From: Macrostomum lignano
Taxonomy: Eukaryota
Direction of reading: 5' to 3'
Assembly (NCBI GenBank): GCA_002269645.1
Contig: NIVC01002529.1
Coordinates: 62,001-126,000 of the forward strand
Length of the DNA stretch: 64,000 bases
This document shows, one piece after another, positions 1,898-25,699 of the stretch. The translations under genes were made by a program, and so were the position numbers. A model generated the notes under the pieces. That model made no database searches, was not told where the DNA came from, and worked only from the letters and a program-made list of their open reading frames with translations. Positions within the stretch are counted from its first letter, which is position 1; each line of letters opens with the position of its first letter.

Positions 1898-1983
1898 GCA
1901 ATCCTATTAAAATCAATCGCTTCTCAACTAGCAGCAGCAATTAGTAAAGCTACTAGTTAGTTTTCTCATTTGTTCACACTCAC

Positions 1984-2424
1984 GTTGGCCTGCTCCCAGG
2001 TGAAGCTGGTCTTCTCCAGCTTGAACTTCGTGCCGAACAAGTCGAAGCCGAAGCCCGAGCCGCACAGAGCGCCCGGCTGCGCCGCGCCGGCCACGTTGCG
2101 GACGAAGACGTCGGCCGTCCGATTCGGACACGGCATCACCGACCGGACGCGCCGGCTGAACGCGCCAAAGTTGAATCGGCGACAGCGAGCCGGAGCAGTC
2201 AGGATGGCGAAGGCCATGCAGCTGGGCAACTTGGCGCACGCGAACGAGCAGGACTTCGGATCGCCTTTGCCTGACAGGTCGGGCATCGCAAAGCGAGGAT
2301 CGATGCAATCGAGCACCTGCGTGCTCACGCGGGTGAAGGTCGCCTTCTCCGAGCAGCCGGTCGATAAGTCGGCGGCAGCCCGGGAGATGCAGAGAAGCAG
2401 CTGGGCGAGAAGAGCGGCGCGCAT
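1984..2424 (-). CDS. Exon of secreted PAN/apple + C-type lectin protein, paralog A (second exon not found in window)
   Basis: ATG at 2424 gives MRAALLAQLLLCISRAAADLSTGC (signal-peptide-like), a Cys-spaced PAN-like region (CSFACAKLPSC...C) and the start of a CTLD (FTWEQAN), ending at a GTGAGT donor (1983). 441 nt, open frame. Homologous to 9937-10376. Confidence 0.75.
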
Positions 2425-2803
2425 GCTGGAGTGGCAGGCTGGAGCAGCGGCAGAGGCTTGGGCGGCAACCGGAGGCTGGCGAGGACCGGCGCATTTAAGC
2501 TGAAAACGCGGAATAGGAGGGGGAGAGAAGGGAGGGTAGGGCAGCGGAGAGTAAACTAGATTGGCTGCCCTCAGTTGAGCAACAAGCAGAGCAGTGCCAG
2601 CAGCCATTTCAACAAGTGGTTGCTATGGGTAACAAAAAACAAATTGCTGCGTCTGGTATCCCTCCCCGCGCCGGCTTGTCTCTAGCTATACATTTACAAT
2701 ATCTAACTGCCCATCTCAGCACCTCTGTTAATTGGCGTGCACTTAGAATAGCCCAGTGAGACTTCTTTCTCTTTAAACGGTTTTTGGTTTGACATATTGA
2801 GAT

Positions 2804-3112: not shown

Positions 3113-4006
3113 ACATACGAGATAGATAGATAGATAGTAGATAGCGAGAAAGAGCGAGCGAAGCGAGCTCTTTCGAGCTTGCTTGCCGCAGCCAATCAAG
3201 CTGAATGCACGCACACAAGATCACCGGAAACGATTAAGGTAGCTGGAAAGCCAATGGGCGCGGTAAGCGCTTTTATCCAGAGGAACTACCTGCTGGAACC
3301 AGCCATGCCGAACGAAAATCAGTCTACTCAAGTAGTGCAAAAGAGTAGCATGAGAACTTGGAGTAGCCACAGTACATCACTTTCAATAACTTTTACACAT
3401 CAAATCTAGTGAAGTGGAATCAATTACTTTTACTGTATTTAACTTCAATGTCGTTAACTTAAAAAAGTTCAATAATTTGGTTACTGTATGCAGGTCTAGT
3501 AAATGATTTTACATTCCAGAGTATCGCTCAAAGTCGCCTTGACTGCATACATAATTCATGCCTAATTAACGACGCCTGCGAAGCCAGCCACTCAAGCGGT
3601 GCGCCTTCATTCAGTGTCTGGGAGAGGAGACGATGAAGTCGTTGAGAGAGCCTGGAAGATTGCCTCTCCTGGGTGGGACCTACAGGTAAGAAATATTGCC
3701 CGTTGGCTGCTGACTAACGCTCCTTTCATTCGTTGATTTTTATAAAAAACCTACACACATCAATCCAACCGTGACTATTGATTTAGTTCACAGATACGAG
3801 AGAGCAATGTTATACTGTAAAAGCTGAATAGATTACCTGATCATGAAATAATTTACTCAGGCGCGTCGCCACGGGGGGGGACAGGGGGACATGCCCCCCT
3901 CCCAGTAAATGCTATGGGGGGACATGCCAATGCTTTGTCCCCCCACCCCACCTTATGACCCGTTGTGGTAATCAATCATGTTTCTTCAGGGCGCCAAAAA
4001 TATAGC

Positions 4007-5212
4007 GCCTTCGGCGCAAAATGAGTGCCTGCGGCGCCAAAAGGAATGCCTGAGGTGCCAAAATGAGTGCCTGCGGCGCCAAAATGAATGCCTGCGGCGC
4101 TAAAGGAATGCCTGAGGCGCCAAAATGAGTGCCTGCGGCGCCAAAAGGAATGCCTGAGGCGCCAAAATGAGTGCCTGCGGCGCCAAAATGAATGCCTGCG
4201 GCGCTAAAAGGAATGCCTGCGGCGCCAAAATGAATGCCTGCGGCGCCAAAATAAGTGCCTGCGGCGCCAAAAGGAATGCCTGAGGCGCCAAAATGAGTGC
4301 CTGCGGCGCCAAAATGAATGCCTGCGGCGCTAAAGGAATGCCTGAGGCGCCAAAATGAGTGCCTGCGGCGCCAAAAGGAATGCCTGAGGCGCAAATTGAG
4401 TGCCTGCGGCGTCAAAATGAATGCCTGCGGCGCCAAAATGAATGCCTGCGGCGCTAAAAGGAATGCCTGCGGCGCCAAAATGAATGCCTGCGGCGCCAAA
4501 ATAAGTGCCTGCGGCGCCAAAAGGAATGCCTGAGGCGCCAAAATGAGTGCCTGCGGCGCCAAAATGAATGCCTGCGGCGCTAAAGGAATGCCTGAGGCGC
4601 CAAAATGAGTGCCTGCGGCGCCAAAAGGAATGCCTGAGGCGCAAATTGAGTGCCTGCGGCGTCAAAATGAATGCCTGCGGCGCCAAAATAAGTGCCTGCG
4701 GCGCCAAAAGGAATGCCTGAGGCGCCAAAATGAGTGCCTGCGGCGCCAAAATGAATGCCTGCGGCGCTAAAGGAATGCCTGAGGCGCCAAAATGAGTGCC
4801 TGCGGCTCCAAAAGGAATGCCTGAGGCGCAAATTGAGTGCCTGCGGCGTCAAAATGAATGCCTGCGGCGCCAAAATGAATGCCTGCGGCGCTAAAAGGAA
4901 TGCCTGCGGCGCCAAAATGAATGCCTGCGGCGCCAAAATAAGTGCCTGCGGCGCCAAAAGGAATGCCTGAGGCGCCAAAATGAGTGCCTGCGGCGCCAAA
5001 ATGAATGCCTGCGGCGCTAAAGGAATGCCTGAGGCGCCAAAATGAGTGCCTGCGGCGCCAAAAGGAATGCATGAGGCGCAAATTGAGTGCCTGCGGCGTC
5101 AAAATGAATGCCTGCGGCGCCAAAATGAATGCCTGCGGCGCTAAAAGGAATGCCTGCGGCGCCAAAATGAATGCCTGCGGCGCCAAAATAAGTGCCTGCG
5201 GCGCCAAAATGA
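4007..5212 (+). repeat. About 21-bp satellite with higher-order structure
   Basis: Units GGCGCCAAAATGAGTGCCTGC / GGCGCCAAAAGGAATGCCTGA. Variant CAAATTG at 4392, 4642, 4829, 5079. Confidence 0.95.
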
Positions 5213-5724
5213 GCGCTGACAAACCGATTCTCAAAATAATGGACATGTAGGAATTTATTCATGTACATGTTGCGTTCTTTGCTTTGTTCCCCCACCATAA
5301 AATCCATGGCAACGCCTTTGAATTTACTCGTGACAATGCTGCGCTTTGCGAGAAGTATTCGAATAGAAATAAAAACCCTAGCACTAACTAGCACACTGAC
5401 TATTTTTGCGACATGTTTCGGCTCACGTTAGGCATTTTCCGGCTCATAAGTAATTAGAACCAGCAAACTAAGGAATGTGTCGATACATTTTAACCAAAAA
5501 GGGTCGATTTACGACGGTATATTGTACATTTAGAGAAACCAATCACACAGATCAAGAGGTTATAAATAGTGCGCGGCATATGAGAGGAGAGAAAGAAGAG
5601 ATGTAAGCACGAGTAGTGTGTGCCTATGACCTTTTAGTCGTGAGTCGGACGCTCTGACCACTAGGCTACAGCCCCTACAACCTATCCAATGCTATGCAAA
5701 CCTGTCTGACATCTGCAGCGCAAT

Positions 5725-6025
5725 ATGCGAAGCGGCCGGTTCCGCGCCAGTCCACTGCAGCTTGGCTTAGTCTGCCTCTACCTAGCGGGCGCCGCCGCCA
5801 CTGCCTCAGCGGCCGCCGTGGCCGCCGCCACCGCAGCCGCAGCCAGCTCCGTCACCCCTGCCGTCAAGGCGCCGGTTGTTCCGTCCCCGTCGCTCCCTGT
5901 CCGCAGCGGTGGCGACGGCGGCGGCGCGGACAAGCGATTCTTTCGCGTGATGAACTGCGCCGAACGATGCGAGAGCTTCAACATCAAGGTCTTCAAGGCC
6001 TATTGGGCGATTCACCATTCAAATA
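5725..6025 (+). pseudogene. Exon-1-only inverted duplicate of the 150-aa secreted precursor gene
   Basis: Near-identical to the reverse complement of 17682-17982, same GTAAGT donor at 6026. Homology stops at about 6798 and no exon-2 sequence (NFIQYLRD) is seen downstream on the + strand. Confidence 0.65.
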
Positions 6026-6115
6026 GTAAGTTATAGCTTGTATTGTCCTTTGTTCAGCATGTGTGAACTGTCTTTTTTTATGGTAGGCGTTGCTGAGACA
6101 ATGCCCTAAAAACAG

Positions 6116-6376
6116 GCTACTGGCATCAACCCTCAGTAGGTTACTAGCATCAACCCTCAGTAGGTTACTGGCATCAACCCTCAGTAGGTTACTAGCATCA
6201 ACCCTCAGTAGGTTACTAGCATCAACCCTCAGTAGGTTACTGGCATCAACCCTCAGTAGGTTACTGGCATCAACCCTCAGTAGGTTACTGGCATCAACCC
6301 TCAGTAGGTTACTGGCATCAACCCTCAGTAGGTTACTGGCATCAACCCTCAGTAGGTTACTGGCATCAATCCTCAC
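6116..6376 (+). repeat. 24-bp VNTR, about 10 copies
   Basis: Unit CTGGCATCAACCCTCAGTAGGTTA. Confidence 0.95.
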
Positions 6377-6547
6377 CGCAGTCAAAGTAAGCTGAGCTGA
6401 AGTTCACCCAATAACCACTAGCATAGCAGGAAAATGTGACATTTCAAATTGCATTAACAAGATGGGAAGTTTTCAGTTCCTGGCAGTCAATAGTCGACTT
6501 CTTACCTTCTGCCTTATCGATTGATTGTTTTTGACTGTTGAAAAAGC

Positions 6548-6798
6548 TGAGTTGTAGCCTAATAGTTAGAACAACCCACTCGGAACAATTTGTGTCCTTG
6601 AGCAAGACACTTAACTCTGCATTGCTTCAGCTCACCCAGCTGTAAAATGGGTGCCAGCATTAGCTGGGGTAATTGAGGGTGTGTGTGGCGACCCCCCAGT
6701 CCTTGGACTGAACAGCCGTACGCAGCCTTCAGATGCGCCGCGCAATAGCTGCGGCTGAGCTGTCGGTTGCACATCTGCCATTAGGGCAGGTGTAATCA
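6548..6798 (+). mobile_element. CORE-SINE family A, internally deleted head
   Basis: Same CORE and 3' body as 18032-18321, with the B-box region of the head missing. Confidence 0.75.
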
Positions 6799-7931: not shown

Positions 7932-9442
7932 CACTCACTCTGAGAAAACCCACTGTGGCTGCAGAGCAGCCATCAAAGAAACAGCACCCGTTTTTACACA
8001 GCCCATTACACCTTTTCACGTTCAATTTCGATCAAAGTCCAGTTCTAAAAAAACTAGCGGAAATTCAATTCAGACTGAGGATAATTTTGTCTATGGCTAA
8101 ACCTTACTTCGGTTAGAATGCTTTGAGTTGGGGTTAGACTGGGCCCAAGTCTAAATTGTCTGAATTGAATTTCCGCTAGTTTTTTAGAACTGGACTTTGA
8201 TCAAAATTGAACGTGAAAAGGTGTAGTGAATCTATGGCTGCTCTGCAGCCAGCAGATTTTCAGAGTGAATGCTGTGGCTTCTTGTGGGTACGCTCGTAGA
8301 TGCAGATGTCTATGGCTGCTCTGCAGCCAGCGGATTTTCAGAGTGAATGCTGTGGCTGCTTGTTGGTACGCTCGTAGATGCAGAGTCTATGGCTGCTCTG
8401 CAGCCAGCGGATTTTCAGAGTGAATGCTGTGGCTGCTTGTGGGTACGCTCGTAGATGCAGATGTCTATGGCTACTCTGCAGCCAGCGGATTTTCAGAGTG
8501 AATGCTGTGGCTGCTTGTGGGTACGCTCGTAGATGCAGATGTCTATGGCTGCTCTGCAGCCAGCGGATTTTCAGAGTGAATGCTGTGGCTGCTTGTGGGT
8601 ACGCTCGTAGATGCAGATGTCTATGGCTGCTCTGCAGCCAGCGGATTTTCAGAGTGAATGCTGTGGCTGCTTGTGGGTACGCTCGTAGATGCAGATGTCT
8701 ATGGCTGCTCTGCAGCCAGCGGATTTTCAGAGTGAATGCTGTGGCTGCTTGTGGGTACGCTCGTAGATGCAGATGTCTATGGCTGCTCTGCAGCCAGCGG
8801 ATTTTCAGAGTGAATGCTGTGGCTGCTTGTGGGTACGCTCGTAGATGCAGATGTCTATGGCTGCTCTGCAGCCAGCGGATTTTCAGAGTGAATGCTGTGG
8901 CTGCTTGTGGGTACGCTCGTAGATGCAGATGTCTATGGCTGCTCTGCAGCCAGCGGATTTTCAGAGTGAATGCTGTGGCTGCTTGTGGGTACGCTCGTAG
9001 ATGCAGATGTCTATGGCTGCTCTGTAGCCAGCGGATTTTCAGAGTGAATGCTGTGGCTGCTTGTGGGTACGCTCGTAGATGCAGATGTCTATGGCTGCTC
9101 TGCAGCCAGCGGATTTTCAGAGTGAATGCTGTGGCTGCTTGTGGGTACGCTCGTAGATGCAGATGTCTATGGCTGCTCTGCAGCCAGCGGATTTTCAGAG
9201 TGAATGCTGTGGCTGCTTGTGGGTACGCTCGTAGATGCAGATGTCTATGGCTGCTCTGCAGCCAGCGGATTTTCAGAGTGAATGCTGTGGCTGCTTGTGG
9301 GTACGCTCGTAGATGCAGATGTCTATGGCTGCTCTGCAGCCAGCGGATTTTCAGAGTGAATGCTGTGGCTGCTTGTGGGTACGCTCGTAGATGCAGATGT
9401 CTATGGCTGCTCTGCAGCCAACGGGTTTTCTCAGAGTGAGTG
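7932..9442. mobile_element. Foldback/inverted-repeat element with one arm expanded into a 78-bp satellite
   Basis: Inner arms 8004-8075 and 8158-8228 are near-perfect reverse complements. Outer left segment 7932-7973 is the reverse complement of the array's terminal segment ending at 9442. Confidence 0.55.
8232..9420 (+). repeat. 78-bp satellite, about 15 highly homogeneous copies
   Basis: Unit CTATGGCTGCTCTGCAGCCAGCGGATTTTCAGAGTGAATGCTGTGGCTGCTTGTGGGTACGCTCGTAGATGCAGATGT. Confidence 0.95.
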
Positions 9443-9936
9443 CACAGGCTTGAGGGGCAGAAGTGGTTTTAAAGCAGAGAGTATCGCTAATTTTACAGCT
9501 AATTGCAGTATAGTTTTACTATAATAAATGCACTTCTTTGAATACTTTCCCTGAATAACTCGCTCTCATCATAGTCACCGTCTCTACAACAGGATTTGAA
9601 GATTTGAAAATTAACCGCACTGATTCAGTGAAGTGTTTTAGCAGTACTCGAAGAGGGCCGAGGGTTACACGGGTTTCCCTCATGAGAAAAAAGAGTAAAA
9701 GACAATGGCGAGGCGACGGAGCTGATGCATCATACATTTTCTTTCCTTTCCATGGAAACAATTGTTCTTAAACTGCAAACCCTTCACGCTGCCTGACAGC
9801 CAATCCATCAACTGACTCCTGCCTTTCACTCCTCCTTCGTCTCTCCTTTTGAATTTTTCAGCTTAAATGCGCCGGTCCTCGCCAGCCTCCGGTTGCCGCC
9901 CAAGCCTCTGCCGCTGCCCCAGCCTGCCACTCCAGC

Positions 9937-11121
9937 ATGCGCGCCGCCCTTCTCGCCCAGCTGCTTCTCTGCATCTCCCGGGCTGCCGCCGACTTATCGA
10001 CCGGCTGCTCGGAGAAGGTGACCTTCACCGCGTGAGCACGCAGGTGCTCGACTGCATCGATCCTCGCTTTGCGATGCTCGACCTGTCAGGCGTCAGCGAT
10101 CCGAAGTCCTGCTCGTTCGCGTGCGCCAAGTTGCCCACCTGCATGGCCTTCGCCATCCTCACTGCTCCGGCTCGCTGTCGCAGATTCAACTTTGGCGCGT
10201 TCAGCCGGCGCGTCCGGTCGGTGACGCCGTGTCCGAATCGGACGGCCGACGTCTTCGTCCGCAACGTGGGCGGCGCGGTGCAGCCGGGCGCTCTGTGCGG
10301 CTCGGGCTTCGGCTTCGACTTGTTCGGCACGAAGTTCAAGCTGGAGAAGAGCAGCTTCACCTGGGAGCAGGCCAACGTGAGTGCTTTGTTTCTCAAGCTA
10401 CACACTGGATAGGCTGGCAGAGTGAAATATCATTATGTACTTTCATTAAAAGAGCGACTGTAACTTTAGGAGAAAATTCAATCATATCTCTAGACAAGGG
10501 TTAATGCCTTAACACTTGATTGTTAAAGTTGCAGGTAATTGTAATTAAGTCGCCCTTGAGTTATGTCAGCCCAAAAACATGATTGTTATTTCCTCCTGGC
10601 TAACTTCCGAGCAGCTGACATTCGATTTCAAACTGTATGTCTACAATGGTAGATCCGGTAGTGGTTCCGCATCTTGTTGGTGCCGGCTCTATGTTTCAGA
10701 AACAAGTGTTCAAGATTAGCTAATATTTGCAATAGTAAAGCTGAACTGTAGACTTGTAATTAGTAATAACTTTCCCATGCAGACCCATTGCGAGTCGCTC
10801 GGAGGCCTGTCCCGCCTGGCTGAGCTGGTGGACCGCCAGGACATGGACCACGCTGCCATCATGGGCGGCTATCCGTGGTCCGATCACGCCTGGCTGAACG
10901 CCTTCCAGCCGCCTGGCAGCGTGGAGCCGGACCAGGGCTGGCTGTGGCTGGGCTCCGGCCTGTCCGTGAACATGAGCAGCTCGCTGTGGGACTCGGACGA
11001 TCCCGACAACGACGTGAACCAGAATCGCATGGTGCTGGAGAAGTCAGGCGTTGTGTTCAACGACAAAGCCGAATCGGAGAATAACTACGCGCTCTGCCAG
11101 TGCGTCAGCCCGTTCGACTGA
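9937..11121 (+). pseudogene. PAN/apple + C-type lectin paralog B, two exons, frameshifted in exon 1
   Basis: Exon 9937-10376 (440 nt, versus 441 in paralog A; ttcaccgcgtg versus ttcacccgcgtg near 10027). Phase-0 intron 10377-10782. Exon 10783-11121 encodes THCESLGGLSRLAEL...W.W...WDSDDPDND...FND...LCQC*, a CTLD. Could be a pseudogene or a sequencing indel. Confidence 0.7.
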
Positions 11122-14972: not shown

Positions 14973-15825
14973 AGTCGCTTCTATATATTCTGGCCTAATA
15001 GGATTATGTTTGCAAACACCGAGAACGTAGAAAAAAATCCTATTAATATTGTTGCAGAACACATTGGATCCATCTGTCCGGTCTGTACCAAGCTCTCTGA
15101 ACTGCCAAATTTAGCATATTCAGCAGCGAGCCATTAAAATTAGCCAGACTCTTTCTCGGGCCGGTCCAGTAGCGCCAATATTAACTGCTAGTGATTGCCA
15201 TTCAGCTGCATACCCGGCCTCAAATCTGCATCATTTCGCATGCAAATTGGCTCGCGACCACGGGGGAAATGCTATTGCAGAGCCGTCTGGAACCTCCGCT
15301 GTGCAGAGAGGCGCTCTGTTCTAATTTTAGAGGCTGTAGAAATGCTAAAAAAATTCTGAATCAATTTTTTCTCTCCCAACTCTCGATTTCCAGTGCATTC
15401 ATATTGCTATTAGCGGTGAATCGAATATTTAGCGCCTTGAAGACTGCAGCTGGTGATTTTTTTAGGTCTTTTCTCCGGCGCGCGCTGCCAGCTGCTGCCG
15501 GGTCTTCCAGTGCAGGAAGTGGCTAATTTCTGTTCCTGATGAACTCTGCCTGACTGATACAGTAATAAGCCGAATTTTCAATCTGTTTTTTTACTAGATT
15601 ACGAATCATTTTATCACAGGTAAAGGTCAACTGCCGCTAAACACTGCAGTCAGTTATTTTTGCGATGGCTCAGTATTTCCGGTTCTATGGTGGATATCAT
15701 GTATTTTCACTTGCTCAGAGTTGTTTGAGTTGACACGCAAAAGTTTTGAGTTCGAGTCGGAGAGCCTATAGGATTAATAAACTCATTAAAGTTCGGCTTG
15801 ATCTGTTTGAAAGGGAGAAGCCTCA

Positions 15826-17982
15826 TCATCCCATCAAGTAGTCCGTGCCGCAGGTGGCGTACCGGCAAATCTCGTAGTCGCGAACGGCCTTGTCCAGCAC
15901 GCGTTTGAAGGAGCCCAGCTCGTCCTTGTGCAGAGTTGACCAGACCACCAGGTCGCGTAGGTACTGGATGAAGTTCACTTGAAGTGGATTGAGGAAATAT
16001 GAATAAATAATTCAAGTGGTGTTCCATTCTTAGCACTAACAACTACAGCAACGAAGCTACTCTGTCAGAACTTAAAAAAGTATCACAGGGTGCGCATCTG
16101 GATTTGCGCGCGATTTGAGCAGGTAAAGTAGGGCCGCCGACAGAATCTGGGGAGCCGATATCAGGACATAAGCCAGCTGGCAGTCGACAAAGCGCCGGTA
16201 GGATGCCTGCAGCGTCAGTCAGCAGCAGCATCTCCTGCGTCAGCTGAAGGCAAAACGACTCGGCGCGGATGATATGGCCTGTTAGCTGGGGCCCCTAAAG
16301 GCGCAATAGGTCGCTTGGACGGGCCAAATTTAACTATAATAACTCTAACTATTAGCCCTCAAGCCTTCCAATAATTAATCATATGGAGTATTAAACATCC
16401 TGTATAATTTTGTGGAGACCGGAAACAAGCAAAAGTGCGAGTACTCTGTGTTTTCTAGACTGACTTTTAGCAGAGTACATTGCATCAGATGGGCTTTTAG
16501 CTCAGGACAGTTTCCAACAAACAGAAATAGTAATAAAAATTGATTACACCTGTCCCAATGGGCAGATGTGCAACCGACAGCTCAGCCGCAGCTATTGCGC
16601 TGCGCATCTGAAGGCAGCTGCGTACGGCTGCTCAGTCCAAGGACTGGGGGGTCGCCACACAGACCCTCAATTACCCCAGCTAATGCTGGCACCCATTTTA
16701 CAGCTGGGTGAGCTGAAGCAATGCAGAGTTAAGCGTCTTGCTCAAGGACACAAATTGTTCCGAGTGGGTTGTTCTAACTATTAGGCTACAACTCCTCAGC
16801 TTTTTCAACTGTCAAAAACAATCAATCGATAAGGCAGAAGGTGAGAAGTCGACTATTGACTGACAGGACCTGAAAACTTCCCATCTTGTTAATGCAATTT
16901 TGAAATGTCACATTTTCCTGCTATGCTAGTGGTTATTGGGTGAAGTTTCGCTCAGCTTACTTTGACTGCGGTGAGGATTGATGCTAGTAACCTACTGAGG
17001 GTTGATGCCAGTAACCTACTGAGGGTTGATGCCAGTAACCTACTGAGGGTTGATGCTAGTAACCTACTGAGGGTTGATGCCAGTAACCTACTGAGGGTTG
17101 ATGCCAGTAACCTACTGAGGGTTGATGCTAGTAACCTACTGAGGGTTGATGCCAGTAACCTACTGAGGGTTGATGCTAGTAACCTACTGAGGGTTGATGC
17201 TAGTAACCTACTGAGGGTTGATGCCAGTAACCTACTGAGGGTTGATGCCAGTAACCTACTGAGGGTTGATGCCAGTAACCTACTGAGGGTTGATGCCAGT
17301 AACCTACTGAGGGTTGATGCTAGTAACCTACTGAGGGTTGATGCCAGTAACCTACTGAGGGTTGATGCTAGTAACCTACTGAGGGTTGATGCCAGTAACC
17401 TACTGAGGGTTGATGCCAGTAACCTACTGAGGGTTGATGCTAGTAACCTACTGAGGGTTGATGCCAGTAACCTACTGAGGGTTGATGCTAGTAACCTACT
17501 GAGGGTTGATGCCAGTAACCTACTGAGGGTTGATGCTAGTAACCTACTGAGGGTTGATGCTAGTAACCTACTGAGGGTTGATGCCAGTAGCCTGTTTTTA
17601 GGGCATTGTCTCAGCGACGCCTACCATCAAAAAAGACAGTTCACACATGCTGAACAAAGGACAATACAAGCCATAACTTACTATTTGAATGGTGAATCGC
17701 CCAATAGGCCTTGAAGACCTTGATGTTGAAGCTCTCGCATCGTTCGGCGCAGTTCATCACGCGAAAGAATCGCTTGTCCGCGCCGCCGCCGTCGCCACCG
17801 CTGCGGACAGGGAGCGACGGGGATGGAACAACCGGCGCCTTGACGGCAGGGGTGACGGAGCTGGCTGCGGCTGCAGCGGCGGCGGCCACGGCGGCCGCTG
17901 AGGCAGTGGCGGCGGCGCCCGCTAGGTAGAGGCAGACTAAGCCAAGCTGCAGTGGACTGGCGCGGAACCGGCCGCTTCGCAT
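15826..17982 (-). CDS. Uncharacterised 150-aa secreted prepropeptide (neurohormone-like), two exons
   Basis: Exon 1 17682-17982 (100 codons + 1 nt, GTAAGT donor). Exon 2 15826-15977 (AG acceptor, 2 nt + 49 codons + TGA). The phases join to give ...HHSN-M-NFIQYLRD...CRYATCGTDYLMG*. GC-rich codon usage in both exons. Confidence 0.7.
16539..16795 (-). mobile_element. CORE-SINE family A, internally deleted head (intronic; source of the 6548 copy by duplication)
   Basis: Reverse complement is near-identical to 6548-6798, with the same head deletion. Confidence 0.75.
16973..17590 (-). repeat. 24-bp VNTR, about 25 copies (same unit as 6116-6376)
   Basis: Unit GATGC(C/T)AGTAACCTACTGAGGGTT on +. Confidence 0.95.
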
Positions 17983-18031: not shown

Positions 18032-18321
18032 GGGGCTGTAGCCTAGTGGTCAGAGCGTCCGACTCACGACTGACAGGTCGGGGGTTCGATTCTCGACCCA
18101 CTCGGAACAGTTTGTGTCCTTGAGCAAGACGCTTAACTCTGCATTGCTTCAGCTCACCCAGCTGTAAAATGGGTGCCAGCATTAGCTGGGGTAATTGAGG
18201 GTGTTCGTGGCGACCCCCCAGTCCTTGGACTGAGCAGCCGTACGCAGCCTTCAGATGCGCCGCGCAATAGCTGCGGCTGAGCTGTGAGTTGCACATGTCC
18301 ATTGGGACAGGTGTAATCAAT
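18032..18321 (+). mobile_element. Full-length tRNA-derived CORE-SINE (family A)
   Basis: tRNA-like head with A box (TAGCCTAGTGG) and B box (GGTTCGATTC), then GTGTCCTTGAGCAAGACGCTTAACTCTG...CTGTAAAATGGG, which matches the CORE domain of MIR-type SINEs. Two further copies in the window. Confidence 0.8.
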
Positions 18322-19519
18322 TTTTTCAATGGATAAGTCAGTTACACACTAACGAAAGCGTGAACATTTACCATTGCCTTTCACAGTTAAATTGCACTAA
18401 GCGCTTAGGTGTGAGGATTGGTACAAACCTGAACCCACCGGTCAGGAATGCAGATATTTGATAGGCACGTTTGATAGGCGAGTTAAAGCTAGAAATTTGC
18501 ACTCAACAGTTTGAGTCTGACAAAAGGCATTCTCACCTGATTCTAATTAGCTCTTCTCGGTTCCTCCTGGGTCCAAAAATGTCGAATTTCTCCTTCGATT
18601 TGCAAGCTTCCGCTCGGAGTCTGCTAGGCCTCTCTTATCCCGTCTCCTAGTAGCAGCAATGACAGCAGCAGGTCAGAACTCCCCATCTCTGGCTGAAGAA
18701 ATTGGCACGCATCGGCGCCGGCTGCAACCCCTCCCCCCAACCAGGTTGGCCAATGGACACAGGGCAGGCCGAGACCGGGCACTAGGGATGCAGTAGTTAG
18801 TAGACTGTCAGCGAATACGTGGGCGAGAGACGTAATCCCCATAATCCCCTTCGACTTGCGGAGCGCATGAACTGTACTGTAGGAGAAATTGTTTCGAAGA
18901 ATCGGAAAAACAAGCGCAAAGGCCGAGCGCGACGCCAAAATCGCTACTATCCTACAGACAAGGAATCGACAGAAGTATAAACGTGGGAAACAAAGAAAGA
19001 ATATTACAAGCGAGGGTGGAGCATACCTGCTGATGGGACGATGGTGGAATGTTCTGAACGAAACGTCATTTGATTTTTTGGGGGGGGACAACTGCAGTAG
19101 AGGAACTCTATACTCAATTTTCTTAGAAATAAGCTGGAGGCTCTACTTGTATATACAGAGCAGTCTACGGGGGAGGTGCACTGATGGGGAAGGGATGACA
19201 AAAGCGGCTGACCAATCAGAGGCCCGCTACAGAGCAGACGGGGGGTCAGCGCAAGGGCCGGGGCAGAGGGTCCGGCCACCCCCGAAGCCAGGGTGCAGAG
19301 GCATACACCCCAAAACCCTGGCCCAAAGCGCCGGCAGGGCAGGAAACGGAGGAGAGGGGCTAATCCATGGATTGAATAAAACCATCCTTGGGCCAAACCT
19401 CGCCCTTTAGAGGTCTAGGTGTGAAAGGGCCTCGGACTGCAGGACCACCGACACAGAACGGAAGGCTGTCTGTCTCTCCTTGCTACACTAAGCCAGTAGA
19501 GTTAGCAATACACAGAGTA

Positions 19520-19794: not shown

Positions 19795-20497
19795 CAGATA
19801 GCAAGCATCCCCCTGCAGATAGCAAGCATCCCCCAGATAGCAAGCATCCCCCTGCAGATAGCAAGCATCCCCCTGCAGATAGCAAGCATCCCCCAGATAG
19901 CAAGCATCCCCCAGATAGCAAGCATCCCCCAGATAGCAAGCATCCCCCTGCAGATAGCAAGCATCCCCCAGATAGCAAGCATCCCCCTGCAGATAGCAAG
20001 CATCCCCCAGATAGCAAGTATCCCCCAGATAGCAAGCATCCCCCAGATAGCAAGCATCCCCCTGCAGATAGCAAGCATCCCCCAGATAGCAAGCATCCCC
20101 CAGATAGCAAGCATCCCCCAGATAGCAAGCATCCCCCAGATAGCAAGCATCCCCCTGCAGATAGCAAGCATCCCCCAGATAGCAAGCATCCCCCAGATAG
20201 CAAGCATCCCCCTGCAGATAGCAAGCATCCCCCAGATAGCAAGCATCCTCCAGATAGCAAGCATCCCCCAGATAGCAAGCATCCCCCTGCAGATAGCAAG
20301 CATCCCCCAGATAGCAAGCATCCCCCAGATAGCAAGCATCCCCCAGATAGCAAGCATCCCCCAGATAGCAAGCATCCCCCTGCAGATAGCAAGCATCCCC
20401 CAGATAGCAAGCATCCTCCAGATAGCAAGCATCCCCCAGATAGCAAGCATCCCCCTGCAGATAGCAAGCATCCCCCAGATAGCAAGCATCCTCCAGA
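19795..20497 (+). repeat. 18/21-bp minisatellite abutting the SINE B 3' end
   Basis: AGATAGCAAGCATCCCCC with or without TGC. Confidence 0.95.
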
Positions 20498-20972
20498 TTA
20501 TTAACAATGAATGTACCAGTGGTCTGAGTTGGAGTTCCATTAGGAAGTCAGAGGATAGCAAAACTCCAAAATATGACCAAATGGTCCCGTCAACTTTTTA
20601 AACTTCCTGGTTTCAATTAAATCTTTAAAGCACAGCGCAGACTGGATTCAAACTCAGTCGAGCTTCAGACAGCCCATGGAAGCCACGGCTGACACTTCTG
20701 CTGCCCATTAATTGTCACGATCTCTAGGGAGCAAAGAATCAGTCGATGTAAGCGTTCGGGTTAATCACTCACTTTCGATCTTAATTTCGAAAAATATATA
20801 ATAGAAGACTAATCCTTGATTAATTATTTTAAGATTTCTAGAGCTCTGTTTTACTGACCAAGTCAAAATCGAATTGGGCATCAACTCTGAAACTTCCAAA
20901 TCGAGTTTACATACGACCCCTGAGAATGAGGCCGGATATTGAAAAAATGAATGTTTTTATGTTCCTTTCAAG

Positions 20973-21954: not shown

Positions 21955-22505
21955 GCATAGTTGTAGATTCGACATCCTGGTTGTACATCTGACATTCTGA
22001 TTGTAGATTTGACATTCTAATTGCAGATTTGACATCTTGGCTGGTTGTAGATTTGCATCCTGGTTGCAGATTTGACATCCTGATTGTAAATTTTACATCA
22101 TGGTTGTATATTTTACATCCAAGTTGTACATTTGACATCCTGGTTAGATTTTACTTCCTGGTTGTAGATTTTAAATCCGAGTTGTAGATTTGGCATCCTG
22201 GTTGTAGCTTTGACATCCTGGTTGTAGATTTGACATCCTGGTTGTAGATTTGACATCCTGGTTGTAGATTTGACATCTTGGTTGTAGATTTTACTTGCTA
22301 ATTGTAGATTTTGCATCCGAGTTGTAGATTTAATATCCTGGTTGTAGATTTGACATCCTGGTTGTAAATTTAACATCCTGGTTGCAGATTTGACATCCGG
22401 GTTGTAGATTTGACATCCTGGCTGTGGATTTAACATCCGGATTGTAGATTTGAAATCTTGGTTGTACATCTGACCTTCTGGTTGAAGATTTGACATCCCA
22501 GATGC
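21955..22505 (+). repeat. Degenerate 20-bp minisatellite
   Basis: Consensus GTTGTAGATTTGACATCCTG. Confidence 0.85.
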
Positions 22506-23497: not shown

Positions 23498-23840
23498 GCA
23501 TGTGTCCTTTGTCGAATGGCATGTGTCGCTTGCCGAATCTCATGCATGCTTGCCGAATGGCATGTGCCCTTTGCCGAATCTCATGTGTCGCTTGCCGAAT
23601 CTCATGTATCGCTTGCCGAATCTCATGTATCTCTTGCCGAATCTCATGTATCTCTTGCCGAATGGCATGTGTCCCTTGCCGAATCTGAATCTCATGTGTC
23701 GCTTGCCAAATGGTATGTATCGCTTGCCAAATGGCGTGTGTCCCTTGCCGAATCTCATGTATGGCTTGCCGAATCTCATGTATCGCTTGCCGAATCTCAT
23801 GTATCGCTTGCCGAATGGCATGTGTCGCTTGCCGAACCGC
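23498..23840 (+). repeat. 21-bp minisatellite
   Basis: CTTGCCGAATCTCATGTATCG and variants. Confidence 0.9.
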
Positions 23841-24261
23841 ATTCGACTCCCTCTGTGGTCCAGCCACACCAGTTCAGCCATCTCCGCAGCCACTCTTGTT
23901 TGCATTTGTTGAGTCACCACAGATTTGACGGAGTTGTCACGGTCTAAAAGAAAAAAAATTGAATTTTTCCAATAGAAATGCCTTGAGTAAGCTGCGCTGT
24001 AGCAAAAATACGATGGCAATTACCCGCCAGAATGTCCTCCGCCTCGGAGCAACCAGCCATCAGAGCTGACAAGTACAGAAAGCACAGAAGCAGCGGCCTC
24101 ATTTCCGTGTGTAAGTTTTTTTATTTTTTGATTTCGAACGCCACTTGCCTAGTAAGTGTTTATTGAGCTTCCGGCTGGACATTGGGGGAATGGGTCTGTG
24201 AGGGGCCATTTATATGTGTGCCTGCCCGCTCTGGATTGGCCAGCAGCTGATTCTAAGGCAG

Positions 24262-24995
<734 letters not shown>

Positions 24996-25699
24996 CACTA
25001 AGACAGTTGTTGCATGCATTATTAGAAAAGGAAAGTTGCGCAATTATAGGTCATGCAGAGAAAGTATGTTTGAATGTAGAGTTGAATTTTATTTCCTATT
25101 TTATTTTGTTACTACTTAAAGTAGAGAATAATCTACTTGGAATGACAAAAATAGTCTGCAGTATTTCGCCCCTTATTTGCTCTCGCATTTTTTAGCTGCT
25201 ACCCGCAAAAAAGGAGATTGGAGAAGACCACAAGGCTACAAAATGGCTACTCGGGTCTGCTGTTTCTCTTTTTGAAAGACGCAACAGCTGCAGGATCGTG
25301 ACTTGAGCTATTTGTACCGATGATGATGATGGGGTTCGGAGTCTGGAGCATCAATCTGCAATTACCTGTTAGATTCTGATGGTAAAAATCCGCCAGAAGT
25401 TGTGTGTGACAGCGGCTGTCTAAGCCTGATTAGTTTACCTGAGACAATTTTAGGCTGACTGAGGCGTTTTATATTTATTAATTAGGTTATTATTGATATT
25501 TCGGGTGAATTGGCCTCATTACGCATAAACTGAAGCTAGTTTTAGTACGAGTATCCAGGGTCTGAGCCAGCTGTAACTGTAGGCGTCAGCTTTGCGGACT
25601 TTCTGAAACATTTGTACGGTCGTACAGCTTGGCTTTTTTATCGATTTTTTAAATGTAGTTTTTGTTGTCAGACACAGGTTAAAGGAAGTCAGAAACAAA

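What the first reader, a model, noticed from the sequence alone, without database searches (positions are those of the whole stretch)
15826..17982. Unrecognised large amidated, disulfide-bonded neurohormone-like precursor hidden across two exons
Seen: splicing 17982-17682 to 15977-15826 (phase 1, GTAAGT/AG) gives a 150-aa protein. It has a hydrophobic N-terminus (LQLGLVCLYLAGAAATASA), an Ala/Gly/Pro-rich spacer, then DKR followed by FFRVMNCAERCESFNIKVFKAYWAIHHSNMNFIQYLRDLVVWSTLHKDELGSFKRVLDKAVRDYEICRYATCGTDYLMG*. The ORF track misses exon 2 in this frame. Established: KR is a prohormone-convertase site and a terminal Gly is the PAM amidation signal. Inference: a 78-aa amidated peptide with two Cys pairs (CAERC, CRYATC). 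A second KR could instead release a 23-aa amidated peptide with a six-residue Cys ring of somatostatin/urotensin/oxytocin geometry. By eye, the spacing C-ES...F..YL....L.....F..L......Y..C...G loosely recalls the vertebrate NPGL/NPGM (FAM237) ~80-aa amidated proteins; this resemblance is unverified.
Basis: partly seen in the sequence, partly recalled or inferred. Interest (0 to 1): 0.8.

Follow-up and report, generated by a model that had tools for sequence, protein, structure and literature searches.

The report
Flatworm orphan secreted prohormone-like gene
A real two-exon gene of the flatworm Macrostomum lignano, already in GenBank as a "hypothetical protein", encodes a secreted precursor that looks built to release a ~9 kDa, three-helix, probably amidated signalling protein, but it has no detectable kinship to vertebrate NPGL/NPGM and no functional data.

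Summary
Splicing 17982-17682 to 15977-15826 (minus strand, GTAAGT...AG, phase 1) gives the 150-aa protein as quoted.

It is not unrecognised as a gene. The protein is 100% identical to GenBank PAA57109.1/PAA82611.1 (BOX15_Mlig014117g2/g1, Macrostomum lignano, "hypothetical protein"), from an RNA-seq-derived annotation.

One paralogous family, Mlig020079, has the same intron position and phase. It also keeps:
- the KR site
- all four Cys
- the terminal Gly

The domain after KR is 56-59% identical between paralogs (dN/dS 0.31). The pre-pro region is only 32% identical.

AlphaFold predicts a confident three-helix bundle with a disordered C-terminal tail. Nothing in the PDB resembles it.

An exhaustive HMMER search of 1.8 billion representatives found no relative outside M. 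lignano.

The FAM237 (NPGL/NPGM) link fails every sequence test: BLASTP found nothing and hhalign gave probability 0.2%. Only the general architecture is analogous.

The second KR is not conserved, so the 23-aa peptide idea is weak.

Best reading: a lineage-restricted preprohormone-like gene yielding a ~78-aa disulfide-stapled, amidated helical protein. A signalling function is inferred, not shown.

An FMRFamide-like peptide precursor lies 5.5 kb upstream.

The parts
17682..17982 (-). Coding exon 1 (301 nt): start codon, signal peptide, Ala/Pro-rich pro-region, KR site, and the first 29 residues of the conserved domain.
   Evidence: Identical to the annotated CDS of BOX15_Mlig014117g2.
17896..17982 (-). 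Predicted signal peptide (about residues 1-29: MRSGRFRASP / LQLGLVCLYLAGAAA / TASA). The exact cleavage point is uncertain because of the poly-Ala run.
   Evidence: Heuristic only: Kyte-Doolittle maximum of 2.44 at residues 13-21, a basic n-region, and -3/-1 rule candidates. The paralog has an even clearer h-region, with a maximum of 3.38. No SignalP run was available.
17770..17775 (-). Lys70-Arg71 dibasic site (ADKR|FF), the proposed prohormone-convertase cleavage site.
   Evidence: Conserved as EKR|AN in the paralog, at the boundary between 32%-identical and 56%-identical sequence. There is no Arg at P4, so it is not a furin consensus. Cleavage itself is inferred.
15978..17681 (-). Intron (1704 nt, GTAAGT...AG, phase 1). 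It carries a 24-nt tandem repeat (16972-17593, 25.9 copies) and a copy of a short interspersed repeat (16535-16769).
   Evidence: Intron length varies among the homeologous copies (1367, 1645 and 1704 nt). The paralog's intron is 793 nt at the same codon position.
15826..15977 (-). Coding exon 2 (152 nt): the rest of the conserved domain, terminal Gly150 (15829-15831), and stop TGA (15826-15828) followed by a second TGA.
   Evidence: tblastn against the paralog's exon 2 gave E=1e-14. The same 152-nt length is found in the paralog.
5628..6798 (+). Inverted, truncated duplicate of the gene's 5' flank, exon 1 (5725-6025; intact ORF, A36T, donor site retained) and the first ~1.1 kb of the intron. 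No copy of exon 2 is present.
   Evidence: blastn at 96-98% identity. Translation and differences are. tblastn hit.

Best explanation
The locus is a real, transcribed two-exon gene of Macrostomum lignano, Mlig014117. It is one of three near-identical homeologous copies and belongs to a two-family paralog group found so far only in this species.

It encodes a 150-aa pre-pro-protein with four parts:
- a signal peptide
- a fast-evolving Ala/Pro-rich pro-region
- a conserved Lys-Arg site
- a conserved 79-residue C-terminal domain ending in Gly-stop

**Proposed mechanism (inferred).**
1. The protein enters the secretory pathway.
2. A PC1/3- or PC2-type convertase cleaves it after KR71.
3. The terminal Gly is converted to a C-terminal amide.

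The product would be a ~78-residue (~9.4 kDa) protein, folded as a three-helix bundle. Two disulfides would tie the N-terminal CxxxC segment to the CxxxxC at the end of the last helix, probably C1-C4 and C2-C3. A flexible amidated tail (...GTDYLM-NH2, or ...STDYLGP-NH2 in the paralog) would protrude.

Such a scaffold-plus-amidated-tail protein most plausibly acts as an extracellular signal, a neuro- or endocrine hormone acting on a receptor. Functionally it would be analogous to the CHH/ITP and NPGL/NPGM small-protein hormones without being homologous to them.

**Shown:** gene structure, identity to the annotated model, paralog conservation, purifying selection, and the predicted fold.

**Inferred:** signal-peptide cleavage, KR cleavage, amidation, disulfide pairing, and hormone function.
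For: **Gene model**
- The spliced ORF was verified.
- It is 100% identical to PAA57109.1/PAA82611.1 and to contig NIVC01002529.1.
- The GenBank annotation is transcript-derived (PMC5730564).

**Conservation**
- The paralog has the same intron codon and phase and the same exon 2 length.
- KR, four Cys and the terminal Gly are conserved. The mature region is 56% identical against 32% for the pre-pro region.
- dN/dS is 0.31 in the mature domain at dS about 1.2.

**Secretion and fold**
- Both paralogs have a signal-peptide-like N-terminus.
- The AlphaFold2 model has mean pLDDT 82.7 and pTM 0.69. Helices span 14-26, 32-50 and 53-72, with a short helix at 7-10, and the tail 75-79 is disordered.

**Context**
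- The amidation and convertase machinery must exist in this animal. The neighbouring gene 5.5 kb upstream is a classic multi-copy [Y/H]M[R/P]F-G-KR FMRFamide-like precursor with its own signal peptide.
Against: - No expression, peptidomic or functional data were found.
- No homolog exists outside M. lignano among 1.8 billion representatives, so nothing can be transferred from relatives.
- Pfam, PDB sequence search and Foldseek-PDB gave nothing.
- Signal-peptide, cleavage and amidation calls are rule-based only.
- The layout of signal peptide, pro-region, KR, mature domain and terminal Gly is shared by toxins, antimicrobial peptides and pheromones, so it does not single out a hormone.
- The AlphaFold model rests on a two-sequence alignment.
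- One homeologous copy (g3, L001) carries a transposon in exon 2, so some redundancy or decay is tolerated.
Confidence: 0.5

Rival explanations
1. The gene encodes a secreted, processed small protein that is not a neurohormone. It would be an exocrine product such as a seminal-fluid or prostate protein, a waterborne pheromone, or an antimicrobial or toxin-like gland peptide. Such products use the same pro-region, KR site and terminal-Gly processing signals.
For: - The family is lineage-restricted, with no relatives outside M. lignano. That is typical of reproductive and defence proteins, which evolve quickly in Macrostomum (theme of PMC7336406 and PMC5977470, listed).
- The processing layout is generic to the regulated secretory pathway (established knowledge).
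- Small disulfide-stapled helical bundles also occur among pheromones (own knowledge; not tested here).
Against: - The mature domain is under purifying selection (dN/dS 0.31) across an old duplication (dS>1), not fast-evolving.
- The gene is absent from the held text of the supplementary files of the seminal-fluid screen and of the positional, germline and ageing RNA-seq papers searched. This is weak evidence, because ID systems differ between papers.
- A conserved terminal Gly and a flexible tail fit receptor-ligand logic.
Confidence: 0.3
2. The protein is a highly divergent protostome ortholog of vertebrate FAM237A/B (NPGL/NPGM), that is, the missing ligand type for protostome GPR83-like receptors.
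For: **Architecture.** Both families have a ~80-88-aa three-helix mature protein, with a Cys early in the first helix region, a Cys near the end of the last helix, and an amidated C-terminal tail.

**Shared motif.** The best local profile match is the helix-B motif NF[IV]x[YF]LR against [DN]FM[IL][YF]L[KQ], at comparable spacing from the Cys residues.

**Receptor side.** GPR83-type receptors are bilaterian and present in lophotrochozoans, with no protostome ligand reported in the reviews read.
Against: - BLASTP found no alignment at E<=100.
- Alignment scores fall within the shuffled distribution, with z from -1 to +1.2.
- hhalign gave probability 0.2% and E 0.24-0.3 against FAM237B and against the FAM237A+B profile.
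- phmmer over 1.8 billion proteins returned no FAM237.
- The precursor layout differs: an N-terminal pro-region with KR and Gly-stop, against a mature peptide directly after the signal peptide followed by G-RR and a C-terminal propeptide.
- The functionally essential HG[LM]-NH2 tail is absent.
- There are four conserved Cys rather than two.
- The two models share no Foldseek hits.
Confidence: 0.05
3. The active product is the short C-terminal peptide released at the second KR (VLDKAVRDYEICRYATCGTDYLM-NH2, with a six-residue Cys ring). The rest of the domain would be a spacer.
For: KR125-126 lies at the loop-helix boundary before the last helix, so it could be accessible. Ring-plus-amide peptides are common (established knowledge).
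Against: - The site is K-P in the paralog, so it is not a conserved processing site.
- The N-terminal 55 residues of the domain are about as conserved (29/55 invariant) as the last 24 (15/24).
- The N-terminal CxxxC pair would be left without partners.
- AlphaFold folds the whole domain as one confident unit.
Confidence: 0.07
4. It is not a functional gene but a chance ORF or annotation artefact in repeat-rich DNA.
For: - The neighbourhood is full of tandem repeats and SINE-like elements in which all frames stay open.
- One copy is truncated and one is transposon-disrupted.
Against: - The exons are unique sequence.
- Intron position and phase, Cys, KR and Gly are conserved in a paralog at saturated synonymous divergence, with dN/dS 0.31.
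- The annotation is transcript-derived.
- The fold prediction is confident.
Confidence: 0.03

Closest known systems
FAM237A/FAM237B (neurosecretory proteins GL and GM; Pfam PF27929), vertebrate GPR83 agonists
   Same: - Secreted mature protein of about 80-88 residues, predicted as three helices.
- Cys near the start of the helical core and near the end of the last helix.
- C-terminal Gly amidation signal. FAM237A's amidated tail is essential for receptor binding.
- A short shared helix-B motif, NFxx[YF]L[RKQ].
   Different: - No significant sequence or profile similarity.
- FAM237 has no N-terminal pro-region, and has G-RR plus a C-terminal propeptide.
- FAM237 has one conserved disulfide, not four conserved Cys.
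- The HG[LM]-NH2 tail is absent here.
- FAM237 orthologs are described from fish to mammals.
Crustacean hyperglycaemic hormone / ion transport peptide family (CHH/ITP, Pfam PF01147)
   Same: The precursor logic is the same, from my own knowledge of type-I CHH precursors: signal peptide, then a poorly conserved precursor-related peptide, then KR, then a ~72-78-residue helical disulfide-bonded hormone, then a C-terminal Gly amidation signal.
   Different: - CHH/ITP has six invariant Cys (three disulfides) with a characteristic spacing. This protein has four in a different pattern.
- There was no Pfam hit even at E<=10.
- To my knowledge CHH/ITP is an ecdysozoan family; this was not tested.
Twin-CX3C / helical-hairpin and saposin-like disulfide staples
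   Same: A CxxxC on one helical segment and a Cx4C on another suggest two parallel staples between the N- and C-terminal segments. This is inference.
   Different: - Twin-CX3C proteins are mitochondrial and lack signal peptides.
- Saposin-like proteins have six Cys.
- Foldseek against the PDB, which holds many saposin folds, gave nothing below E=5.
Flatworm FMRFamide-like peptide precursors (the neighbouring gene in this window)
   Same: Signal peptide, KR processing and Gly amidation signals. Same strand, 5.5 kb apart.
   Different: The neighbour encodes many tandem copies of a 4-7-residue peptide. The finding's gene encodes one large folded domain. There is no sequence relationship.

Membership tests
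FAM237 (NPGL/NPGM) | Detectable sequence or profile homology to FAM237A/B | tested here: not met
   BLASTP found no alignment at E<=100. Shuffle z-scores ran from -0.99 to +1.21. hhalign gave probability 0.2% and E 0.24-0.3. No FAM237 appeared among the phmmer hits. The local Pfam copy lacks PF27929, so Pfam is uninformative here.
FAM237 (NPGL/NPGM) | Precursor layout: signal peptide directly followed by the mature protein, then Gly, a dibasic site and a C-terminal propeptide | tested here: not met
   The M. lignano precursor has an N-terminal pro-region ending in KR, and its Gly is the last residue before the stop. FAM237B shows ...HGM-G-RR followed by a propeptide.
FAM237 (NPGL/NPGM) | Three-helix mature protein of about 80-88 residues | tested here: met
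   AlphaFold2 helices are 14-26, 32-50 and 53-72 here. In FAM237B they are 18-35, 44-56 and 62-86. The two models could not be superposed directly with these tools.
FAM237 (NPGL/NPGM) | Single conserved disulfide (QCW...VDC) and a conserved HG[L/M]-NH2 tail needed for GPR83 binding | tested here: not met
   This protein has four conserved Cys (CxxxC...CxxxxC), with tails DYLM-G and YLGP-G. The requirement for H78/G79/L80 is described.
FAM237 (NPGL/NPGM) | Agonist of a GPR83-type receptor | not testable with these tools
   This needs a receptor assay. GPR83-type receptors are reported in lophotrochozoans.
CHH/ITP (PF01147) | Six invariant Cys and a match to the family profile | tested here: not met
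   Only four Cys occur in the mature domain. hmmscan against Pfam-A returned no family at E<=10.
CHH/ITP (PF01147) | Layout of signal peptide, precursor-related peptide, KR, ~72-aa hormone and Gly | tested here: met
   Read directly from the sequence. The CHH layout itself comes from my own knowledge.
Amidated peptide/protein prohormone (generic kind) | N-terminal signal peptide | tested here: met
   A basic n-region, a hydrophobic h-region and small -3/-1 residues occur in both paralogs. This is heuristic; no SignalP run was done.
Amidated peptide/protein prohormone (generic kind) | Conserved dibasic cleavage site flanking the conserved product, and a C-terminal Gly | tested here: met
   DKR and EKR align, and the terminal Gly is conserved. 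The conservation step is 32% to 56% identity.
Amidated peptide/protein prohormone (generic kind) | Expression in neurons or endocrine cells, and detection of the processed amidated product | not testable with these tools
   No expression tables mention Mlig014117 or Mlig020079. No peptidomics data were available.
Saposin-like proteins | Six-Cys pattern and saposin fold | tested here: not met
   The domain has four Cys. Foldseek against the PDB gave no hit below E=5, and Pfam gave none.

The most novel reading that the evidence does not exclude
The Mlig014117/Mlig020079 proteins are the flatworm representatives of an ancient bilaterian class of 'scaffolded' amidated protein hormones. In this class a three-helix, disulfide-stapled body presents a short amidated tail. 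On this reading the proteins are orthologous, or functionally equivalent, to vertebrate NPGL/NPGM, and they act on the still-orphan protostome GPR83-type receptors.
Probability: 0.05. Interest if true: 0.8.

Novelty: new member of a known kind. Interest (0 to 1): 0.35.

Why it matters
Flatworm peptide signalling is known almost entirely from short peptides such as FLPs and NPFs. Large folded amidated protein hormones of the CHH/ITP or NPGL/NPGM type have not, to my knowledge, been described in Platyhelminthes.

If the predicted processing is real, this would be a new, lineage-restricted family of that kind. M. lignano is the one flatworm where stable transgenesis and RNAi make a test easy.

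It would also give a concrete candidate to try on orphan spiralian peptide receptors, including GPR83-type receptors, whose protostome ligands are unknown.

If it turns out to be an exocrine product instead, it is one more taxon-restricted secreted protein and of modest interest.

Tried and rejected
**Searches for relatives and known families**
- Pfam-A scans of the precursor, the mature domain and the paralog returned nothing. The local Pfam copy also lacks PF27929, so it cannot test FAM237.
- The PDB sequence search gave only sub-threshold cytohesin noise at E>=0.057.
- Foldseek against the PDB gave a best E of 5.2 for the M. lignano model and 5.6 for FAM237B, with no shared hits.
- The word-seeded protein search with the full precursor found only the self-cluster, apparently swamped by the poly-Ala region.
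- The same search with the two-sequence alignment scored nothing at all, not even the self-hit.
- The exhaustive phmmer search gave only the M. lignano paralog plus repeat-protein artefacts P0003, P0005 and P0006.
- The metagenome contig scan gave 114 pattern matches, none confirmed.

**Literature**
- Searches for the gene IDs and for peptide words found nothing relevant.
- Supplement searches in four M. lignano expression papers found no occurrences.

**Readings considered and rejected**
- An alternative acceptor (…catccag|tac) gives a frame with no paralog conservation (ORF 15707-16042).
- The idea that the L001 copy has a genuine third exon was rejected. It is a ~1.1-kb element with terminal inverted repeats and an 8-bp target duplication, inserted into exon 2.
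- Upstream regions of the two paralogs show no conservation.
- ARAGORN finds no tRNA in the SINE-like repeats.
- The machine-read alignment tables in the FAM237 supplements were clearly corrupted. Only the construct sequences, cross-checked against both DNA strands, were used.
Full report
**What is in the sequence**

The window is eukaryotic and repeat-rich, with 37-60% GC in 2-kb steps. On the minus strand, 17982-17682 (301 nt) joined to 15977-15826 (152 nt) gives a 453-nt ORF. The donor is CAAATA|GTAAGT, the acceptor is CCACTTCAAG|TGAAC, the intron is phase 1, and the ORF ends in TGA-TGA. The ATG is the first in frame after an upstream stop.

**Whose gene it is**

- A protein search returned a 150-aa, 99%-identical [quoted passage not shown].
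- The same 90% cluster holds P0007, which is 100% identical to the window's protein. Its accessions are PAA57109.1 and PAA82611.1 (Mlig014117g2/g1) and UniProt A0A267E8G3.
- The window's gene region is base-for-base identical to contig NIVC01002529.1 (L003).
- The GenBank annotation of that assembly was produced from RNA-seq (StringTie/TACO), a de novo transcriptome and TransDecoder, not ab initio (PMC5730564). The splice junction therefore has indirect transcript support.

The gene is thus not hidden or unrecognised as a model. What is missing is any functional annotation. I found no paper mentioning the gene ID or its peptide words.

**Relatives and selection**

An exhaustive phmmer run of the mature region covered 1.84 billion representative proteins. 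It found one true relative, P0002 (59% identical), plus P0004, a mispredicted fragment of the same gene, and three tandem-repeat artefacts. P0002 is M. lignano Mlig020079, again in three homeologous copies.

- **Gene structure.** The Mlig020079 gene (L002) has the same structure: exon 1 of 304 nt, a phase-1 intron splitting the same codon (...A|TG AAC TTC), and exon 2 of exactly 152 nt.
- **Conserved features.** The alignment shows that the KR site, all four Cys of the C-terminal domain and the terminal Gly are conserved.
- **Identity by region.** Identity is 32% in the signal and pro-region and 56% after KR.
- **Selection.** Nei-Gojobori estimates give dS of about 1.2-1.8, which is saturated and indicates an old duplication. 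dN/dS is 0.31 in the mature domain and 0.53 in the poorly alignable pre-pro region.
- **Homeologous copies.** They differ from the window at one to four CDS positions, mostly synonymous. The single amino-acid change, G66S, lies in the pro-region.

This is a genuine protein-coding family under purifying selection. As far as public protein space shows, it is restricted to Macrostomum.

**Anatomy of the protein**

- Both paralogs start with a basic n-region followed by a hydrophobic h-region (Kyte-Doolittle maxima 2.44 and 3.38) and small residues suitable for signal peptidase. This is heuristic, as SignalP was unavailable.
- The KR (ADKR|FF and PEKR|AN) has no Arg at P4. It therefore looks like a PC1/3- or PC2-type site rather than a furin site (established knowledge).
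- The second KR of the window protein (SFKR|VL) is FKPL in the paralog. The paralog has its own unconserved RR. Internal dibasic sites are therefore not conserved.
- The terminal Gly is conserved although its neighbours are not (YL-MG* versus YLGPG*).
- AlphaFold2 on the two-sequence alignment gives a confident model with mean pLDDT 82.7 and pTM 0.69. It has a short helix at 7-10 carrying the CxxxC, helices at 14-26, 32-50 and 53-72, the Cx4C at the end of the last helix, and a disordered tail at 75-79.
Two Cys spaced i/i+4 on a helical segment normally pair with another segment rather than each other.
- The calculated product without Gly is 78 residues, 9.41 kDa, with pI 8.4.

**Testing the FAM237 (NPGL/NPGM) idea**

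I recovered mature human FAM237B (88 aa) and FAM237A (80 aa) from the expression-construct figures of two preprints, checking codons on both strands. I also collected 31 FAM237B proteins, carrying Pfam PF27929.

Sequence tests:
- BLASTP gave no alignment at E<=100.
- Semi-global and local BLOSUM62 scores lie inside the shuffled distribution, with z from -0.99 to +1.21.
- hhalign of the M. lignano pair against FAM237B, mature FAM237B, and a FAM237A+B profile gave probability 0.2% and E 0.24-0.3.
- The best local match is a 7-column stretch, NFIQYLR against DFMIYLK, in the middle helix. This is interesting to the eye but statistically empty.

Architecture:
- AlphaFold2 of FAM237B gives helices at 18-35, 44-56 and 62-86, with Cys in the first and last core helices.
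- The FAM237A paper describes three helices, one disulfide, and an extruded amidated HGL tail. Both the amide and the disulfide are essential for GPR83 binding.
- The topology and the body-plus-amidated-tail logic are therefore analogous.

Differences:
- FAM237 has no N-terminal pro-region.
- FAM237 carries G-RR plus a C-terminal propeptide.
- The Cys complements differ.
- The critical HG[LM] tail is absent here.

Verdict: it may work like FAM237, but membership is not supported. CHH/ITP shares the precursor layout (own knowledge) but not the six-Cys signature or the Pfam profile. Neither the PDB sequence search nor Foldseek found anything.

**Surroundings**

- **FLP neighbour.** About 5.5 kb upstream on the same strand (23540-24102) lies an annotated 160-aa gene. 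I read it as a textbook FMRFamide-like peptide precursor. Exon 1 encodes MRPLLLCFLYLSALMAGCS..., followed by a short GT-AG intron. Then come about 13 tandem [Y/H]M[R/P]F-G-[K][R/G/P] units on a 21-nt repeat. It is present with copy-number variation in all three homeologous loci, but not within 6 kb of the paralog. This shows the peptide-processing context exists in the animal. It says nothing direct about the finding.
- **Intron content.** The intron holds a 24-nt tandem array of 25.9 copies and one arm of an inverted pair of ~230-bp interspersed repeats. The other arm lies just upstream of the ATG.
- **Truncated duplicate.** An inverted, truncated duplicate of the 5' flank, exon 1 and part of the intron lies at 5628-6798.
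- **Disrupted g3 copy.** In the g3 homeolog (L001), a ~1.1-kb element with CAGTGTTGGGCA terminal inverted repeats and an 8-bp target duplication interrupts codon 139. The public annotation treats it as an intron.

**Conclusion and scores**

The gene is real (about 0.95). A secreted, KR-processed, amidated ~78-aa helical protein is the best-supported product. An extracellular signalling role (neuro- or endocrine hormone) is the most likely function, but it rests on architecture alone. Overall confidence is 0.5.

The main rival is an exocrine secreted protein using the same processing signals (0.3). The FAM237 orthology idea is given 0.05 and the 23-mer idea 0.07.

I rate it a new member of a known kind: an uncharacterised, lineage-restricted prohormone-like family. 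Interest is 0.35. It is worth a cheap in situ, peptidomics or RNAi test in a tractable model, but it is not surprising as it stands.

Noticed in passing
window 23540-24102 (minus strand); also L001 4089-4630 and L004 4612-5105: This annotated 160-aa gene is a multi-copy FMRFamide-like peptide precursor. Exon 1 (24102-24024) encodes the signal peptide MRPLLLCFLYLSALMAGCS. A GT-AG intron follows, and exon 2 (23943-23540) carries about 13 tandem YMRF-G-KR, HMPF-G-KR and YIPF-G-KR units on a 21-nt repeat. A TATAAA box lies upstream. Unit number differs among the three homeologous loci (160, 153 and 137 aa). Pfam gives no hit.
   Followed up: partly
window 5628-6798 (+), compared with 18079-16541 (-): An inverted, truncated duplicate (96-98% identity) covers the gene's 5' flank, exon 1 (5725-6025; intact ORF, A36T, donor GTAAGT kept) and the first part of the intron. 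It has fewer 24-nt repeats and no exon 2. It may be a dead fragment or an exon available for another transcript.
   Followed up: partly
L001 12061-13164 (homeolog g3, contig NIVC01000903.1): A ~1.1-kb element is inserted into exon 2 at codon 139. It has terminal inverted repeats CAGTGTTGGGCA...TGCCCAACACTG and an 8-bp target-site duplication GATTTGCC, which looks hAT-like. The GenBank model PAA75106.1 splices it out as an intron, which may be an artefact of mapping transcripts from the intact copies.
   Followed up: partly
window 18096-18325, 16535-16769 and 6574-6798: Three copies of a ~230-bp interspersed repeat (94-95% identical) occur here. Two of them form an inverted pair bracketing exon 1, one just upstream of the ATG and one in the intron. 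The repeat looks tRNA-derived by eye, but ARAGORN calls no tRNA.
   Followed up: partly
window 16972-17593 (intron) and many other sites (19795-20498, 21960-22498, 23509-23836, 24256-24466, 24685-24997, 8378-9439, 3972-5246): Dense minisatellite arrays with 16-24-nt periods keep long ORFs open in several frames. They generate spurious 'proteins', and the same kind of repeat proteins contaminated the HMMER hit list (P0003, P0005).
   Followed up: no
window 1966-2607 (-) and 9867-10412 (+), with 10777-11121 (+): Two near-identical, oppositely oriented copies of an ORF encode a Cys-containing domain with a faint PAN/Apple-like signal (PF14295, E=0.088, below threshold). Together with the exon-1 duplicate, they point to a larger inverted segmental duplication in the left part of the window.
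   Followed up: no
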